Below, piece by piece: positions 8,804 to 51,513 of a DNA stretch of 64,000 nt. The position numbers and the translations under genes are program-made. The stretch spans positions 248,001 to 312,000 of the IMG/VR virus record IMGVR_UViG_3300042923_000569; one strand, 5' to 3'. Positions within the stretch are counted from its first letter, which is position 1. Every line of letters begins with the position of its first letter. A model generated the notes under the pieces. It was not told the origin of the DNA. It made no database searches and saw only the letters and a list, made by a program, of their open reading frames with translations.

Positions 8804-8829
8804 TTAAATTATTACCTTAAAGTTATGGT

Positions 8830-9465
8830 TAAAAGAATGCTACTCGCCTTGCTTACGCAAGTCAATGATTTTGTTCTCTGCGAGAATCAAAATCTACTTT
8901 AATAATTATTCTGTTATTAAAAGAACCTTTAATATCAAAACACTTATGAAAGTACTTCATAACTTACCTATCTTATACTGACAAGATTTGTAGAGGCAAT
9001 TTCATCCCCCACAAGGGGAACGAATCTGACAATGATAGTCGTCGGTATATTGTATTGAGAATTACTTTTCAGTACAGAAGCGGGTTGTTCGGTATTCTTC
9101 TTATCTCAGTTCTAACAACGGTCGAGGTCTTAGCTCTCTAAGTGCCAGGTCTATACAATCAAACCCAGCACCTGAATAGTCATAAAATTTGGACGCAACT
9201 ATACTGTACAAATTTCGATGCTATTCTCCCTTATACTATTTGGTAAGGTGCATCCTTATATGTCTATCGAGGAAGTACTGTTAAGTATTAGATGTACTTC
9301 TTTATAGTGCCGCATTGCCGAGGGAGGTACAAACTATGCCTTCACCTATCGGGTTTCTTCTGCACTTCGTACTGCTTGAACTACTCATCTATCAATTACA
9401 TTTTCATTGAAGTAGGAACAAAACATTAGGGGCATTACGCCCCTATCAAACAGAGTTTTATTATC
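8830..9465 (-). ncRNA. candidate large (~600 nt) structured non-coding RNA
   Basis: No ORF >=60 aa; many hairpins (GTGCTGGGTTT/AGACCTGGCAC, TTCGTTCCCC-TTGT-GGGGGATGAA, CTTGC-GTAA-GCAAG); directly downstream of the stable-RNA promoter motif at 9474. Confidence 0.55.
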
Positions 9466-9473
9466 ACAGGTAC

Positions 9474-9503
9474 ATTATACCACATTAATCGAAGTCGTTT
9501 CAA
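9474..9503 (-). promoter_or_regulatory. WTGAAAC-type phage promoter
   Basis: TTGAAACG...TGTGGTATAAT, 18-nt spacer. Confidence 0.75.
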
Positions 9504-9528
9504 AAAATGTGTAGATTGTATAGTACCC

Positions 9529-10887: not shown

Positions 10888-10926
10888 TTTATTCTCAATT
10901 AAAAGTAATGTTGTTTCGGTAGGAGT

Positions 10927-13343: not shown

Positions 13344-14348
13344 TTATTCGAAGTTAATATTATTACGTACTACAATGCGACGTACTTTATCCATCATATC
13401 ATTGTAGCGACGGGATAGAGTTGCTTTTGAAGTTACAAACTTTCCTTTACCATCAATATAACCAGAAGTAATTACTTCGTCAAAGGTATGAACACGATAC
13501 CCGTCAAGGCCATGTACTAAACCTAATAGAACTCGTTCATGTTCTTCAAGTTCATCCATAATTTCTTCCATCACTGCAAGAAAATCTTTACTCAAACAAC
13601 GTTCATCTACAACGTAGTCTGCACTTTCACCTGGTATAATATCTTTTAGAGTTTGTTCTGAACCTTCTTCTGAACGGTTCATTGGCGTATCAATACTAAA
13701 AGTATTACTGTTATAATTCATAATACGTTTTACTGCACGGATATCGATCCCGGTTGCTTCTGAAATTTGTTCGTTTGTTGGATAGCCATTGCTATCAGAA
13801 ATGAAACGTTCAATGAATGATTGAATTTTAATATTACTTACAGAAAGATGTTCTGGTAGTGCAACCATCCGTACATCATTGTTGCCGTTACGATACATGT
13901 ACTGACGGATTGCAGTAGTAGCATAAGTACTAAACATTGTACGGAAAGATGGATCAAAACCATAGATTGCTTTCATCAATCCTTCGAATCCATATTGTAC
14001 TTTATCTTGGAATGGAATGTTACAAGTACAGTTCTTTGCTTCAGTATAAACTAAACCACTATTATAAAGTACTAGTAGTTTTTTAGATTCTTCTACATCT
14101 TCACCTGATTGGATCTTACGAATAAGTTCTTCATTGCTCACATATTCACGCGACTTTACAGAAGCTTTAATTTTATCCATAGTTAAATCAGAAGAGGAAG
14201 TATTATCTTCTTGTTTTGTTTCTTCTTCTAAATCAAGCGAACCTAGATTATCCAGATTTGTTGTTTCTTCTTCAAAGCATTCGTTTAGTACTTCTTCCTG
14301 AATTTCTTCTAAGTTTAGCTTTTTAATGCTCACATTTTCTCCGAACAA
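13344..14348 (-). CDS. RNA polymerase sigma-70 family factor
   Basis: Region 2 signature LVLYNSGLV...QDKVQYGFEGLMKAIYGFDPSFRTMFSTYA...RMVALP; region 3 PTNEQISEATG...SIDTP; TTG start uncertain. Confidence 0.9.
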   Translation of the reverse strand: MFGENVSIKKLNLEEIQEEVLNECFEEETTNLDNLGSLDLEEETKQEDNTSSSDLTMDKIKASVKSREYVSNEELIRKIQSGEDVEESKKLLVLYNSGLVYTEAKNCTCNIPFQDKVQYGFEGLMKAIYGFDPSFRTMFSTYATTAIRQYMYRNGNNDVRMVALPEHLSVSNIKIQSFIERFISDSNGYPTNEQISEATGIDIRAVKRIMNYNSNTFSIDTPMNRSEEGSEQTLKDIIPGESADYVVDERCLSKDFLAVMEEIMDELEEHERVLLGLVHGLDGYRVHTFDEVITSGYIDGKGKFVTSKATLSRRYNDMMDKVRRIVVRNNINFE

Positions 14349-14430: not shown

Positions 14431-14577
14431 TTATGCTGAGTAGGTGCTGTGAATAATCACGTTACCTTTCTCTTCTTTCAGATAGCGACGTGCTTCGGCT
14501 TCTGAACGTGCTGAAATGCGGGTGCGGTGCTTATTGCTGCTACCTTGGAAATAGTACTCTACGAAATATTCTTTCAT
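14431..14577 (-). CDS. small hypothetical protein (48 aa)
   Basis: Manual: MKEYFVEYYFQGSSNKHRTRISARSEAEARRYLKEEKGNVIIHSTYSA; ATGA-coupled to HTH gene, AAGGA SD. Confidence 0.6.
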   Translation of the reverse strand: MKEYFVEYYFQGSSNKHRTRISARSEAEARRYLKEEKGNVIIHSTYSA

Positions 14578-14819
14578 GATACTGTATCCTTTTGTTTAAG
14601 CTCAGTTGTTATTTTAATATCATAGCCGAGTTCAATTGCAAAGTCAACTAGCATATCGATACTAAACAAATCTTTGCGTTCCTGCATCAAGTTGGATACG
14701 CGAGGCTGAGAAGTCTTTAACGCGTGGGATAAATCCTTCTGTGACATATTGTGGATCAATGCCGTGCCTTTGATTAACTTGAACAACTGTTTCTTTAATG
14801 CGTCTTTATTACTAGCCAT
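14574..14819 (-). CDS. XRE-family HTH transcriptional regulator
   Basis: MSQKDLSHALKTSQPRVSNLMQERKDLFSIDML (HTH_37-like). Confidence 0.85.
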   Translation of the reverse strand: MASNKDALKKQLFKLIKGTALIHNMSQKDLSHALKTSQPRVSNLMQERKDLFSIDMLVDFAIELGYDIKITTELKQKDTVS

Positions 14820-15014
14820 TTCAAAATCTCACTTAAAATTCATCTCGATTAAAAGGTGGCGGGGTTTCCCCCGCCGGGTCTGGCATTCATTGCTTCAACC
14901 GTTACGCATATGCTCTCACCACCGAACTGATGATAACATAGTACTTCGTAGTAAATCAAGAACTTTGTTGAATGAGTTCGGTTCATTCTAAAAGGTACTG
15001 TTTCTCATTCCACC

Positions 15015-15497
15015 TATAAATGGTGTGGGGTATCTACGCTATACCACAAGTACCAGTTTGAAACGTTACGCGGCCTACGTCTACCGCACCAGATAAAGTA
15101 TCTGGAAAGTTTTTCGCTAACTTCATCCTGCTTAACCTATGGTATCGCAAGTCAACGTTTCTACTCCTAGATTACTCACATATTACTATGTCAGCAACAG
15201 TACTGAAACATCAATCCGGTTTCCCCCAGCCCCAGCTCTAACTCGGACTACGCGATTGACATAACCAATGTTCCAGTATACTTCTTTCAATTACCATTAC
15301 TTTGAATGGCGAAGTCAGACATGAGCGGCTTCTACGATATTTGTAGCGGGAATAAGCTACCCCGCATCAATCTCCACCTGTACAGTACAATTACTTTAGT
15401 ACTAATACGTGCTCACTGCAATATGTCTCATTTATAGTGTGAATCTAATTCGCGGTTATTGCCAAAGTGCCGCGAACCAATCACTTTTCGCCTAGAT
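15015..15497 (-). ncRNA. candidate large (~480 nt) structured non-coding RNA
   Basis: No ORF; GC-richer than flanks; hairpins TTCGCGG/CCGCGAA, GCGGG/CCCGC, CCAGATA/TATCTGG, long-range GAAACGTT/AACGTTTC. Confidence 0.5.
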
Positions 15498-15669
15498 TTA
15501 TATGATTAATTTATAATTTAAGTTTTACATTTGCGTAAAGCCCTCATCTTTATTAAACACTACACTTTTCAGTGCATCCAAGAACAATCTTGCTTTAGAG
15601 ACTCTATTATGCTTTCTTTCGAAGTAGAAGTCAAGCATAATTTTCATTTATTTTTCGAATCTTTAAAGT

Positions 15670-15981
15670 TTAAATCGGATATTTCTCTTTCAGTGCTTTC
15701 CAGTCTACCATTCCTGGTAGTACTGTCAATCGCTTTTTTAAGATTTCTTGGGCTAATTTTTCAGCCTGTTCTTCGGCTTGCCAACAGATACGATTCTTAC
15801 TTTCCAGATCATACCATTCATAACCTTCGAAACCATTCCAGCTTTTACATCGTGCTTTGACTTCATGCGTCTTCTTCCAGCACTGGAAGAAATACTTACG
15901 CTCAAGTACTTCGATCTTGATGACAGAACCAAATAAATCAGGTTCAAGTTTAATGAAACTAACAATGAATTTGTGTTTCAT
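15670..15981 (-). CDS. hypothetical protein
   Basis: ORF with SD. Confidence 0.7.
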   Translation of the reverse strand: MKHKFIVSFIKLEPDLFGSVIKIEVLERKYFFQCWKKTHEVKARCKSWNGFEGYEWYDLESKNRICWQAEEQAEKLAQEILKKRLTVLPGMVDWKALKEKYPI

Positions 15982-37352: not shown

Positions 37353-37374
37353 TTCTTTAATCCTTTAGATTTTG

Positions 37375-37448
37375 TGTTCTCGGTAGGGTACGATCCTACA
37401 ACCTATTGCTTCGTAAACAATGGCTCTATCCAGTTGAGCTACAAGAAC
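37375..37448 (-). tRNA. tRNA-Arg(ACG)
   Basis: ATTGT-TTACGAA-GCAAT; D-loop A20; atypical T-loop ATCGTAC. Confidence 0.85.
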
Positions 37449-46926: not shown

Positions 46927-46959
46927 GTGTACCTCTCAATTAAAAAAGGGCATAAGCCC

Positions 46960-51389: not shown

Positions 51390-51513
51390 TGGCGGCGAGT
51401 ACTGGATTCGAACCAGTGACCAGGACATTAAAAGTGTATGAGTTATGGTTGCTGCGGGAATCCAATCAGGATTCCTTGGGTTCTACCTGCTCTACCAACT
51501 GAGCTAACTCGCC
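51390..51513 (-). ncRNA. tRNA-Lys(UUU) interrupted by a 48-nt GAAUC/CAGCAA module (RNA I)
   Basis: Removing 51438-51485 gives a 76-nt cloverleaf with GGACA-CTTTTAA-TGTCC and CCA. Confidence 0.88.

What the first reader, a model, noticed from the sequence alone, without database searches (positions are those of the whole stretch)
15015..15520. Second large structured intergenic RNA candidate (~480 nt)
Seen: ORF-free and GC-richer than its flanks, with several stems and a long-range GAAACGTT/AACGTTTC pairing. It ends on the minus strand in TGTGG...CCACA-CCA and is preceded by two TATAAAT boxes resembling a T4-type late promoter. No tmRNA or RNase P signature was recognised.
Basis: partly seen in the sequence, partly recalled or inferred. 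Interest (0 to 1): 0.6.

Follow-up and report, generated by a model that had tools for sequence, protein, structure and literature searches.

The report
New large structured jumbo-phage RNA
The ORF-free stretch is the core of a roughly 750-nt, elaborately folded non-coding RNA of unknown function, conserved in one group of jumbo phages just upstream of their own sigma-factor gene and matching no described RNA family.

Summary
On the minus strand, about 15599 to 14850 (~750 nt) forms one unit. It has a conserved sigma70-type early promoter, a leader with an invariant Shine-Dalgarno + AUG-UAA element, and a 5' domain. A 3' domain follows, then a hairpin that kisses the last 3'-domain loop and carries an extended -10 promoter-like sequence, then a terminator. 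Next come an HTH_37 gene, a 48-aa ORF and a sigma70-like gene.

Homologues lie at the same place in GAP32, CBB, XbC2, BF, fHe-Yen9-04 and metagenomic relatives, about 9 lineages in all. Covariation is strong:
- 3' domain: 96% of cells paired against 35-46% when partners are slid, and 31 of 50 pairs have compensatory changes.
- 5' core: 93% against 32-40%, and 14 of 26 pairs.

Nothing in Rfam 15, ARAGORN or the searched papers matches it. The "CCA end" belongs to internal hairpins. The TATAAAT boxes are not conserved in relatives.

Function is unknown. My best guess (~0.5) is a stable, autonomous RNA made early in infection. The main rival (~0.27) is a cis-acting leader of the sigma operon. No expression data could be obtained.

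The parts
15606..15634 (-). P1: sigma70-type early promoter. TTGACT (15634-15629), 17-nt spacer, CATAAT (15611-15606), with an A-rich UP-like tract upstream. Predicted start near 15599.
   Evidence: Found by the consensus scan. The -35 box, 17-nt spacer, -10 box and A-tract line up in all 12 aligned loci. The format is the same as the published RpoD-like early promoter class of phage CBB (PMC5259590 Table S5).
15525..15548 (-). Leader element: Shine-Dalgarno-like GAGGG (15545-15541) followed by AUG-UAA (15530-15525), a start codon directly followed by a stop codon. This is a diverged copy of the element GGATTGAACGCARATGTAAC, which is invariant in relatives.
   Evidence: Alignment. The consensus element occurs once per genome and only in the 7 IMG/VR genomes that carry the RNA. 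The ACGCAAATGTAA core occurs once in the window's own genome. The full consensus element is absent from Kae01, EJP2, 121Q, RaK2 and PA5oct. The window copy differs from the consensus by more than 3 bases.
15496..15515 (-). They lie in the A/U-rich linker between the leader and the 5' domain. Probably not a promoter.
   Evidence: Read from the sequence. Not conserved in L009, CBB, BF, Yen9-04 or L012. Exact TATAAATA occurs once in the window against about 10 expected by chance.
15171..15497 (-). 5' domain. First hairpin 15484-15439. Long-range helix 15416-15411 with 15326-15321. Hairpins 15408-15380, 15365-15346 and 15310-15293. Long helix 15278-15263 with 15216-15201, enclosing 15255-15222. 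Hairpin 15197-15172.
   Evidence: Model R2 was built without the window, L009 or Yen9-04, yet finds them at E 1e-9, 1.4e-9 and 3e-4. On the resulting alignment 93.1% of cells pair against 32-40% when partners are slid, and 14 of 26 pairs change on both sides. Hairpins sit at the same two places in all 13 sequences with different stem letters. The long helix shows compensatory differences between the window and L009, by inspection.
14966..15170 (-). 3' domain. Closing helix 15161-15153 with 15068-15060, around four hairpins (15151-15127, 15124-15106, 15105-15089, 15087-15070). Three-way junction 15054-15050 with 14998-14994, holding hairpins 15045-15029 (loop AGCGUAG) and 15025-15011. Last hairpin 14988-14970, with loop CCGAAC at 14981-14976.
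   Evidence: Model R1 scores 137.9 bits, E 2e-38. 96.2% of cells pair against 35-46% when slid. 31 of 50 pairs change on both sides. 0 of 500 shuffles reach the observed covariation score.
14906..14959 (-). P2 and the kissing hairpin. A promoter-like sequence, TTGATT (14959-14954), 18 nt, TG-n-TATCAT (-10 at 14935-14930), is embedded in a hairpin (14944-14906). The hairpin's apical loop GUUCGG (14927-14922) is complementary to the CCGAAC loop of the previous hairpin.
   Evidence: Consensus scan. The hairpin is present in all 12 sequences examined, which include two near-duplicates, and its outer stem covaries. The loop-loop pairing is 6 of 6 in 10 of 10 lineages, with a double change in Yen9-04 (CCAAAC/GUUUGG). 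The inner stem swaps UCA/UGA for UCU/AGA in 4 of 10. TG-n-TATAAT is invariant in relatives.
14848..14875 (-). Intrinsic-terminator-like hairpin GGCGGGG-GAAA-CCCCGCC followed by CUUUUAAU. It is the likely 3' end of the RNA and lies about 30 nt before the HTH gene's start codon.
   Evidence: Consensus scan. An equivalent GC-rich hairpin plus CUUUUAA tail precedes the first downstream gene in 10 of 13 sequences. The tail motif is common in the window, 14 matches against 2.1 expected.
14574..14819 (-). First downstream gene: an 81-aa HTH_37 (Xre/HigA-like) DNA-binding protein.
   Evidence: Pfam PF13744, E 1.4e-10. The orthologues GAP32_488 and CBB_511 are annotated as transcriptional regulators.
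14431..14577 (-). 48-aa ORF between the HTH gene and the sigma gene. No family match.
   Evidence: A 150-nt ORF sits at the same place in GAP32, CBB and XbC2.
13344..14348 (-). Phage sigma70-family factor gene (334 aa). It was the syntenic anchor used to find relatives.
   Evidence: Pfam Sigma70_r2 and Sigma70_r3. 71-91% identity to the sigma genes of GAP32, CBB, XbC2, BF, Yen9-04 and the L009 genome.

Best explanation
Shown: window 15599-14850, minus strand, encodes one conserved and highly structured RNA unit of about 750 nt. Relatives carry 0.6 to about 1 kb versions, with lineage-specific inserted or deleted domains. It consists of a 5' domain, a 3' domain and a terminal hairpin joined to the 3' domain by a 6-bp loop-loop (kissing) contact. 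It belongs to no described RNA family.

Inferred: host RNA polymerase with sigma70 transcribes it from the strong early promoter P1 right after infection, and it ends at the GC-rich terminator just before the HTH/sigma operon. I read it as an autonomous, stable non-coding RNA that acts through its three-dimensional fold, as a scaffold or binding partner for a host or phage component. It would be a further phage-borne large ornate RNA alongside GOLLD and ROOL. The sigma operon downstream would be served by leakage through the terminator and by the embedded promoter P2.

I put the existence of the structured RNA at about 0.95. The autonomous, trans-acting reading is about 0.5. Its molecular target is unknown.
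For: - A syntenic unannotated gap of 0.7-1.6 kb lies upstream of the sigma operon in GAP32, CBB, XbC2, BF and Yen9-04 and in IMG/VR and metagenome relatives.
- Covariation is strong in both domains. It is also seen in the terminal hairpin and the kissing loops.
- G-U pairs make up about 43 of the 650 cells in the table. They would be A-C mismatches on the other strand, so the sense strand is the minus strand. Searches agree.
- The whole predicted transcript folds at -221.4 kcal/mol against -188.8 +/- 5.3 for shuffles, z -6.2, and the fold recovers the consensus helices.
- The promoter is conserved in all loci and a terminator-like hairpin is present in 10 of 13. Promoter plus terminator is the layout of a separate RNA gene.
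- No conserved ORF exists on either strand. GAP32_487A and the antisense ORFs are broken by stops and frameshifts in relatives.
- Peripheral domains come and go: there are large inserts in the GAP32/XbC2 group, and L009 lacks the whole 3' domain. Large autonomous RNAs typically vary this way.
- From general knowledge: structured bacterial RNAs above 500 nt with several domains are nearly all autonomous RNAs or ribozymes, not leaders.
Against: - The 5' end, 3' end, stability and timing are all predictions.
- The position is fixed directly upstream of the sigma operon, on the same strand, in every lineage. No gene lies between them, which fits a cis role equally well.
- The terminator has only four U residues, so read-through is likely.
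- The closest relative (L009) lacks the 3' domain and the kissing hairpin, so at least half of the RNA is dispensable in one complete genome.
- Distribution is narrow: two genera plus a few uncultured relatives.
- No partner or target is identified.
Confidence: 0.5

Rival explanations
1. It is a cis-acting leader. The RNA would be a giant 5' untranslated region of the HTH/sigma operon. Its fold, a ribosome sitting on the AUG-UAA element, or a bound factor would decide whether polymerase starting at P1 passes the terminator, or how the operon mRNA is processed and translated. Known parallels are the roughly 570-nt structured rpoS leader and processive antiterminator RNAs such as HK022 put.
For: - In all lineages the RNA sits directly upstream of the sigma operon on the same strand, with a terminator-like hairpin 20-40 nt before the first start codon.
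- The leader holds an invariant Shine-Dalgarno + AUG-UAA element found nowhere else in these genomes. The GAP32 group has a second mini-ORF, AUG-AAG-UAA. Mini-ORFs are typical of attenuation leaders.
- The sigma gene of relatives that lack the RNA (Kae01, EJP2, 121Q, RaK2) also lacks the gap.
Against: - At 0.6-1 kb with two multi-helix domains, it is far larger and more complex than any known leader.
- By eye, I found no conserved alternative pairing between the RNA and the terminator stem. The terminator sequences differ between lineages with no matching change in the RNA.
- The distance from the last conserved hairpin to the terminator varies from about 40 to about 260 nt.
- P2 would bypass nearly the whole RNA.
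- Competition between the leader and the long-range helix is strong only in the window and no better than shuffled sequence in relatives.
- BF and Yen9-04 have a different first gene downstream.
Confidence: 0.27
2. It is an RNA directed at RNA polymerase, working like 6S RNA. The terminal hairpin displays the non-template sequence of a consensus extended -10 promoter (UGnUAUAAU), partly unpaired, with a -35-like UUGNNN upstream. The early, abundant RNA would bind host sigma70 holoenzyme and help hand transcription over to the phage sigma factor encoded next door.
For: - TG-n-TATAAT and TTG(A/C)AG are invariant while the neighbouring stem letters covary. Both the RNA hairpin and the promoter-like letters are therefore under selection.
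- The neighbouring gene encodes a phage sigma factor.
- P1 is an early promoter.
Against: - The simpler reading is that P2 is just a DNA promoter for the operon that happens to overlap the hairpin. L009 keeps a TTGCAG-17-TCTAAT promoter-like site after losing the hairpins.
- No 6S model matches, and the architecture is unlike 6S.
- Sequence-specific sigma70 recognition of a -10 element in RNA is not established.
- No binding data exist.
Confidence: 0.07
3. One reading: a roughly 480-nt RNA made late from a T4-type late promoter and ending in a tRNA-like acceptor with CCA.
For: - Two TATAAAT boxes and the letters CCACACCA are present.
- Late promoters of the ATAAATA type are described for CBB and GAP32 (PMC5259590).
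Against: - The boxes match TATAAATA at 7 of 8 positions and are not conserved in relatives.
- No CCA is present at that place in relatives, where the segment is a UUCG hairpin.
- Conserved, covarying structure continues on both sides of the proposed ends.
- ARAGORN finds nothing there.
Confidence: 0.02
4. It is not a functional RNA. It would instead be a decayed gene, a small-protein gene, or a DNA-level element such as a replication origin or a protein binding array.
For: - Some records annotate small ORFs inside it: GAP32_487A, BF_0505 on the opposite strand, and one in pEa_SNUABM_49.
- An embedded promoter-like site exists.
Against: - Those ORFs are broken in relatives.
- Compensatory changes keep 93-96% of the predicted pairs. 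The G-U pairs fit only one strand.
- Nothing is known that would preserve such pairing in double-stranded DNA.
Confidence: 0.03

Closest known systems
GOLLD and ROOL RNAs (large ornate RNAs, often phage- or prophage-borne; PMC12286853)
   Same: Several hundred nucleotides long. Many helices and junctions, with conserved loops. Carried by phages that also carry many tRNA genes. Peripheral domains are variable. Function unknown.
   Different: No match to their Rfam models, in the window at E up to 10 or in five homologous loci at E up to 1. The hosts are Enterobacterales-type jumbo myoviruses, not Firmicutes or rumen phages. The nearest tRNA gene is 9 kb away. The RNA has a fixed position before a sigma-factor operon, a start-stop leader and an embedded promoter. 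Whether it forms multimers is unknown.
lncRNAs of jumbo phage PA5oct, defined by RNA-seq (PMC7318152)
   Same: Unannotated ORF-free stretches of 0.24-0.62 kb in a jumbo phage of the wider Rak2/GAP32-related group. They are transcribed, two of them at high levels. They show that such phages make long non-coding RNAs.
   Different: No homology. Neither R1 nor R2 matches the PA5oct genome, and the leader element is absent. No structure or conservation was reported for the PA5oct RNAs. Here it is the reverse: structure is shown and expression is not.
Long structured leaders and antiterminator RNAs (rpoS 5' UTR, HK022 put RNA); named from general knowledge
   Same: An RNA element lies between a promoter and a terminator or regulatory gene. 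A sigma-family gene is downstream. It could act on the polymerase or ribosome that makes or reads it.
   Different: put is about 70 nt with two hairpins, and the rpoS leader has no comparable conserved multi-domain fold. No alternative terminator/antiterminator pairing was found here. None of these have sequence models that match.
6S RNA
   Same: It would be an abundant RNA presenting a promoter-like feature to sigma70 holoenzyme.
   Different: 6S is about 180 nt, a single long irregular hairpin with a central bubble and no sequence-specific -10 element. There is no Rfam match. RNA polymerase binding is untested.

Membership tests
tmRNA | tRNA-like domain formed by paired 5' and 3' ends, with T-arm, discriminator base and CCA | tested here: not met
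   ARAGORN finds no tmRNA in the window. Rfam gives no match. The CCACACCA letters lie inside two internal hairpins and are not conserved in relatives.
tmRNA | Internal tag-peptide reading frame flanked by pseudoknots | tested here: not met
   No conserved ORF on the RNA strand. The longest sense ORFs are 32-84 aa and are not shared between lineages.
RNase P RNA (bacterial A/B, archaeal) | Match to the conserved P4 core and overall fold, as captured by the Rfam covariance models | tested here: not met
   No match at E up to 10 in window 14700-15800. None at E up to 1 in five homologous loci.
GOLLD / ROOL / OLE / HEARO / raiA and other large Rfam RNAs | Match to the family covariance model | tested here: not met
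   Searches returned no match except tRNAs and one chance snoRNA hit (15.9 bits, E 8.5).
GOLLD / ROOL-like 'large ornate phage RNA' (a kind, not a family) | More than 400 nt, many covarying helices and junctions, phage-borne, no coding capacity | tested here: met
   The phage origin follows.
GOLLD / ROOL-like 'large ornate phage RNA' (a kind, not a family) | Homo-oligomeric RNA-only assembly | not testable with these tools
   Needs native gels or cryo-EM.
Group I / group II intron | Match to the intron models, and an interrupted host gene with flanking exons | tested here: not met
   No Rfam match. The flanks are a promoter and a terminator, not exon halves.
6S RNA | Roughly 180-nt irregular hairpin with a central bubble; match to the 6S models | tested here: not met
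   No Rfam match. The multi-domain fold is unlike 6S.
6S RNA | Binds sigma70 holoenzyme | not testable with these tools
   A biochemical assay is needed.
T4-type late promoter | TATAAATA at about -10 from the start, conserved among relatives | tested here: not met
   The window has TATAAATT and TATAAATC. L009, CBB, BF, Yen9-04 and L012 lack the box at that place. Exact TATAAATA occurs once in the window against about 10 expected.
Sigma70-type (RpoD-like) early promoter class of CBB/GAP32-type phages | A-rich UP-like tract, CTTGACA-like -35, 17-nt spacer, TAnnAT -10 | tested here: met
   The window has TTGACT-17-CATAAT. It is aligned and conserved in all 12 loci. The format is the same as in PMC5259590 Table S5. 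Activity was not tested.
Intrinsic terminator | GC-rich hairpin directly followed by a U-tract | tested here: inconclusive
   A 7-bp all-GC stem with a 4-nt loop is present and has equivalents in 10 of 13 sequences. The tract has only 4 U residues, and the tail motif is also a common pre-gene sequence. Termination efficiency is unknown.
Riboswitch / attenuator leader | Conserved sensor domain whose folding excludes or permits a terminator or an SD-hiding helix | tested here: inconclusive
   By eye, I found no conserved alternative pairing with the terminator. Pairing of the leader against the long-range helix is strong only in the window, -15.0 against -6.3 +/- 2.3, and not in relatives. No riboswitch model matches.

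The most novel reading that the evidence does not exclude
A previously undescribed class of large ornate phage RNA that targets the host transcription machinery. It would be made in the first minutes from a strong sigma70 promoter and fold into a compact particle closed by a kissing-loop contact. It would present an RNA copy of a consensus extended -10 promoter to host sigma70 holoenzyme, or to another host factor. This would help switch the cell to the phage-encoded sigma factor whose gene lies directly downstream.
Probability: 0.08. Interest if true: 0.9.

Novelty: new variant of a known kind. Interest (0 to 1): 0.66.

Why it matters
Bacterial and phage RNAs above about 500 nt with many conserved helices are rare. 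The known ones are mostly ribozymes, RNA-protein machines, or unexplained giants such as GOLLD, ROOL and OLE, which recently proved to build RNA-only cages. This adds one more such family.

Unlike most of those, it occurs in cultured lytic phages with workable hosts: GAP32 on Cronobacter, CBB on Pectobacterium, BF on Serratia, pEa_SNUABM on Erwinia, and fHe-Yen9-04. Deletion, complementation, probing and pull-down experiments are therefore directly possible.

Its fixed place between a strong early promoter and the phage's own sigma-factor operon suggests a role in the early takeover of transcription by jumbo phages, a process that is poorly understood.

It also corrects database annotation. 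The region is left blank, or carries spurious small ORFs, in the GenBank records examined.

Tried and rejected
- Near-identity search of the phage collection found nothing. The distant mode found only a 48-nt core in BF-type phages.
- Rfam found nothing relevant, either at gathering thresholds or at E-value thresholds.
- The MAFFT + RNAalifold alignment of the 5' domain across all clades was too poor to use, giving 8-11 pairs. I replaced it with a model built from one clade and searched the others with it.
- The pattern TCATGTCTGACTTCNCC was too unspecific, giving 22 mostly chance hits.
- L051 (a P-type ATPase gene) and L058 (a Paenibacillaceae MAG) are chance hits of the P2 pattern.
- R1 and R2 found nothing in Kae01, EJP2, 121Q, RaK2 or PA5oct. 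The best hits had E 0.4-0.8 and are noise.
- Only one copy exists in the window's own genome.
- Long-range pairing of the leader with the rest of the RNA by duplex folding gave no consistent partner. The leader-versus-helix competition idea holds only in the window.
- A recurring AGCGUNG hairpin-loop motif is not enriched in the genome: 4 hits against 1 in the control.
- Small-protein readings (GAP32_487A, antisense ORFs) are rejected.
- The four literature searches found no description of this RNA; the last was badly worded.
- No alternative genetic code was used. The large protein searches were not needed.

Full report
**Where the window lies.** The window is bases 248001-312000 of a 357,873-bp IMG/VR virus record with direct terminal repeats. 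Its genes and 26 tRNA genes all lie on the minus strand. The sigma70-like protein encoded at 13344-14348 is 71-78% identical to those of Cronobacter phage GAP32, Pectobacterium phage CBB, Xanthomonas phage XbC2, Serratia phage BF and Yersinia phage fHe-Yen9-04. It is 31-46% identical to those of the Kae01, 121Q and RaK2 groups. The genome is therefore a jumbo myovirus of the GAP32/BF group.

**Checking the observation.**
- Region 15015-15520 has no ORF above 43 aa.
- It is somewhat GC-richer than the window, 0.41-0.445 against 0.357.
- It folds better as minus-strand RNA: -149.6 kcal/mol, z -3.35, against -115.5, z -2.58.
- Rfam and ARAGORN find only tRNAs elsewhere in the window.
- The GAAACGTT/AACGTTTC pairing, the stems and the letters TGTGG...CCACACCA are all present.

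**Relatives.** Megablast found nothing. Sensitive blastn found a 48-nt block, 90% identical, in BF-type phages, in unannotated DNA upstream of their sigma gene. Every close relative has an unannotated gap of 0.7-1.6 kb at the same place. IMG/VR added three further genomes and a metagenome scan added four contigs. That makes about nine lineages at 83% identity or less. The window is the most divergent, 50-57% identical in the 3' domain.

**Structure of the 3' domain.** The 3' domain (window 15170-14966) aligns directly and gives a consensus of 50 pairs. I built a covariance model from it, R1, and realigned 13 sequences to it.
- 96.2% of cells form standard pairs, against 35-46% when the 3' partners are slid by 1-3 columns.
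- 31 of 50 pairs show changes on both sides.
- No shuffle out of 500 reaches the observed covariation score.

A three-way junction follows, then a hairpin with the conserved loop CCGAAC.

**Structure of the 5' domain.** A direct alignment across clades failed. I therefore built model R2 from the GAP32/CBB/XbC2/BF clade only. It recovers the window, its closest relative L009 and Yen9-04 at E 1e-9, 1.4e-9 and 3e-4. On that alignment 93.1% of cells pair against 32-40% when slid, and 14 of 26 pairs change on both sides. Two hairpins sit at the same positions in all 13 sequences with quite different stems. About 43 of the 650 cells are G-U pairs, which fit only the gene strand.

**Ends of the unit.**
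- *Upstream.* All loci share a promoter with an A-tract, a CTTGACA-like -35 box, a 17-nt spacer and a TAnnAT -10 box. In the window this is TTGACT at 15634-15629 and CATAAT at 15611-15606. The format is that of the RpoD-like early promoters described for CBB. That study scanned only the 100 bp before each annotated gene and so could not have seen this one (PMC5259590).
- *Leader.* About 50 nt downstream lies an element that is invariant in relatives, GGATTGAACGCARATGTAAC. It is a Shine-Dalgarno sequence followed by AUG-UAA. It occurs once per genome and only in genomes that have the RNA. The window's copy has diverged.
- *Downstream of the 3' domain.* The structure goes on. A hairpin present in all lineages has a covarying 11-bp outer stem. 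Its apical loop GUUCGG is complementary to the CCGAAC loop of the preceding hairpin in 10 of 10 lineages. Yen9-04 carries a double change, CCAAAC/GUUUGG. The 3-bp inner stem swaps UCA/UGA for UCU/AGA in four lineages.
- *Embedded promoter.* The same hairpin contains an invariant TG-n-TATAAT with TTG(A/C)AG 17-18 nt upstream. In the window this is TTGATT-18-TATCAT at 14959-14930. It is most simply a second sigma70 promoter (P2) for the operon, overlapped by the RNA.
- *Terminator.* A GC-rich hairpin plus CUUUUAA follows (window 14875-14848). It has equivalents in 10 of 13 sequences and lies 20-40 nt before the first downstream start codon.
- *Whole transcript.* The predicted transcript 15600-14848 folds at -221.4 kcal/mol against -188.8 +/- 5.3 for shuffles, z -6.2. 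The centroid fold reproduces the consensus helices.

In relatives the CCACACCA segment is a UUCG-tetraloop hairpin with no CCA, so there is no tRNA-like end. The TATAAAT boxes are 7-of-8 matches to the T4 late box. They are missing from the closest relative and most others. Exact TATAAATA is depleted in this early region, once against about 10 expected.

**Not coding.** The ORF annotated inside the GAP32 copy (GAP32_487A) is broken by stops and frameshifts in all relatives. So are the antisense ORFs of up to 199 aa.

**Distribution and modularity.**
- There is one copy in the window's own genome.
- Neither model, nor the leader element, is found in Kae01, EJP2, 121Q, RaK2 or PA5oct. Their sigma genes have no upstream gap.
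- The GAP32/XbC2 group has 100-200 nt of extra helices between the two domains, and further hairpins plus a second mini-ORF (AUG-AAG-UAA) in the leader.
- BF, CBB, XbC2, L011, L012 and L049 have a further conserved module of about 200 nt before the terminator.
- L009 has a sigma protein 91% identical to the window's. It keeps the promoter, leader, 5' domain and terminator, but lacks the whole 3' domain and the kissing hairpin.

**How it may work.** The fold and its conservation are shown. Everything about function is inference.
- The layout of strong early promoter, long untranslated structured RNA and terminator is that of a separate RNA gene. Together with the size, the number of junctions, the loop-loop contact and the come-and-go peripheral domains, it makes me favour an autonomous, stable RNA acting through its fold (about 0.5).
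- The fixed position before the sigma operon, the start-stop leader and the weak four-U terminator keep a cis-acting leader role alive (about 0.27). However, I found no conserved switch pairing. The one candidate is strong only in the window.
- A 6S-like action on host polymerase through the promoter-like hairpin is an attractive but unsupported idea (about 0.07).

**Comparison with known RNAs.** It matches no family in Rfam 15, in the window or in five homologous loci. The papers I could search do not describe it. In kind it is closest to GOLLD and ROOL (PMC12286853) and to the RNA-seq-defined long RNAs of jumbo phage PA5oct (PMC7318152), with which it shares no homology.

**Limits.**
- There are no expression data.
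- E-values from my models are rough, because calibration was short.
- Alignments fitted to a model lean towards that model. The slid-partner controls, and the recovery of sequences left out of training, answer this in part.
- There are only about nine lineages, several of them closely related.

Noticed in passing
window 8804-9528: Another 725-nt stretch with no minus-strand ORF of 60 aa or more. It has a near-consensus extended -10 promoter (TTGAAA-18-TATAAT, 9503-9474, minus strand) and a terminator-like hairpin only about 30 nt further on (9445-9427). It may be the scan's 'first' RNA candidate. It has no Rfam match.
   Followed up: partly
window 51393-51513 (minus) and 37374-37448 (minus): Rfam reports a 121-nt tRNA match at 51393-51513 (47 bits) that ARAGORN does not call. 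This could be a tRNA with an insertion or intron, or a pseudo-tRNA. Conversely, ARAGORN's tRNA-Arg(acg) at 37374-37448 is not in the Rfam list.
   Followed up: no
whole window: The T4-type late box TATAAATA occurs once, against 10.0 +/- 3.1 expected by chance. This looks like avoidance of late promoters in the early, tRNA-rich region.
   Followed up: partly
whole window, e.g. 10894-10905, 14844-14855, 46935-46946: The motif CTTTTAAKYGAG, allowing one mismatch, occurs 14 times against 2.1 expected, 13 of them on the gene strand. It looks like a general terminator-tail plus ribosome-binding context before early genes.
   Followed up: partly
L009:3320-3480 (IMG/VR UViG_3300031417_000002): The closest relative has lost the whole 3' domain and the kissing hairpin. 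It keeps the 5' domain, a hairpin with an AGCGUG loop, a degenerate P2 (TTGCAG-17-TCTAAT) and the terminator.
   Followed up: yes
L001:3400-3600, L006:2260-2500, L007:2240-2500 (BF, CBB, XbC2; also L011, L012, L049): A further conserved module of about 200 nt lies between the kissing hairpin and the terminator. It is absent from the window, GAP32 and Yen9-04 and has no Rfam match. In BF the annotated start of BF_0506 falls inside it, upstream of the terminator, so that start is doubtful.
   Followed up: partly
L005:1945-2112 (GAP32_487A); L001:3090-3458 (BF_0505, opposite strand): These annotated hypothetical ORFs lie inside the RNA. GAP32_487A is broken by stops and frameshifts in every relative. 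For the opposite strand, only the longest antisense ORF (XbC2) was tested, and it is likewise broken. BF_0505 itself was not tested. These gene calls are probably false.
   Followed up: yes
L019:3966-4689 (Escherichia phage 121Q): 121Q has no gap before its sigma gene but a 723-nt unannotated gap directly after it. Neither RNA model matches there. It was not examined further.
   Followed up: no
window 15548-15525 against 15330-15321: In the window only, the diverged leader element can pair strongly with the 3' strand of the long-range 5'-domain helix: -15.0 kcal/mol against -6.3 +/- 2.3 for shuffled leaders. That helix has itself changed from AUGAAC/GUUCAU to GUGAGC/GCUCAU since the split from L009. 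Relatives show no such excess.
   Followed up: yes
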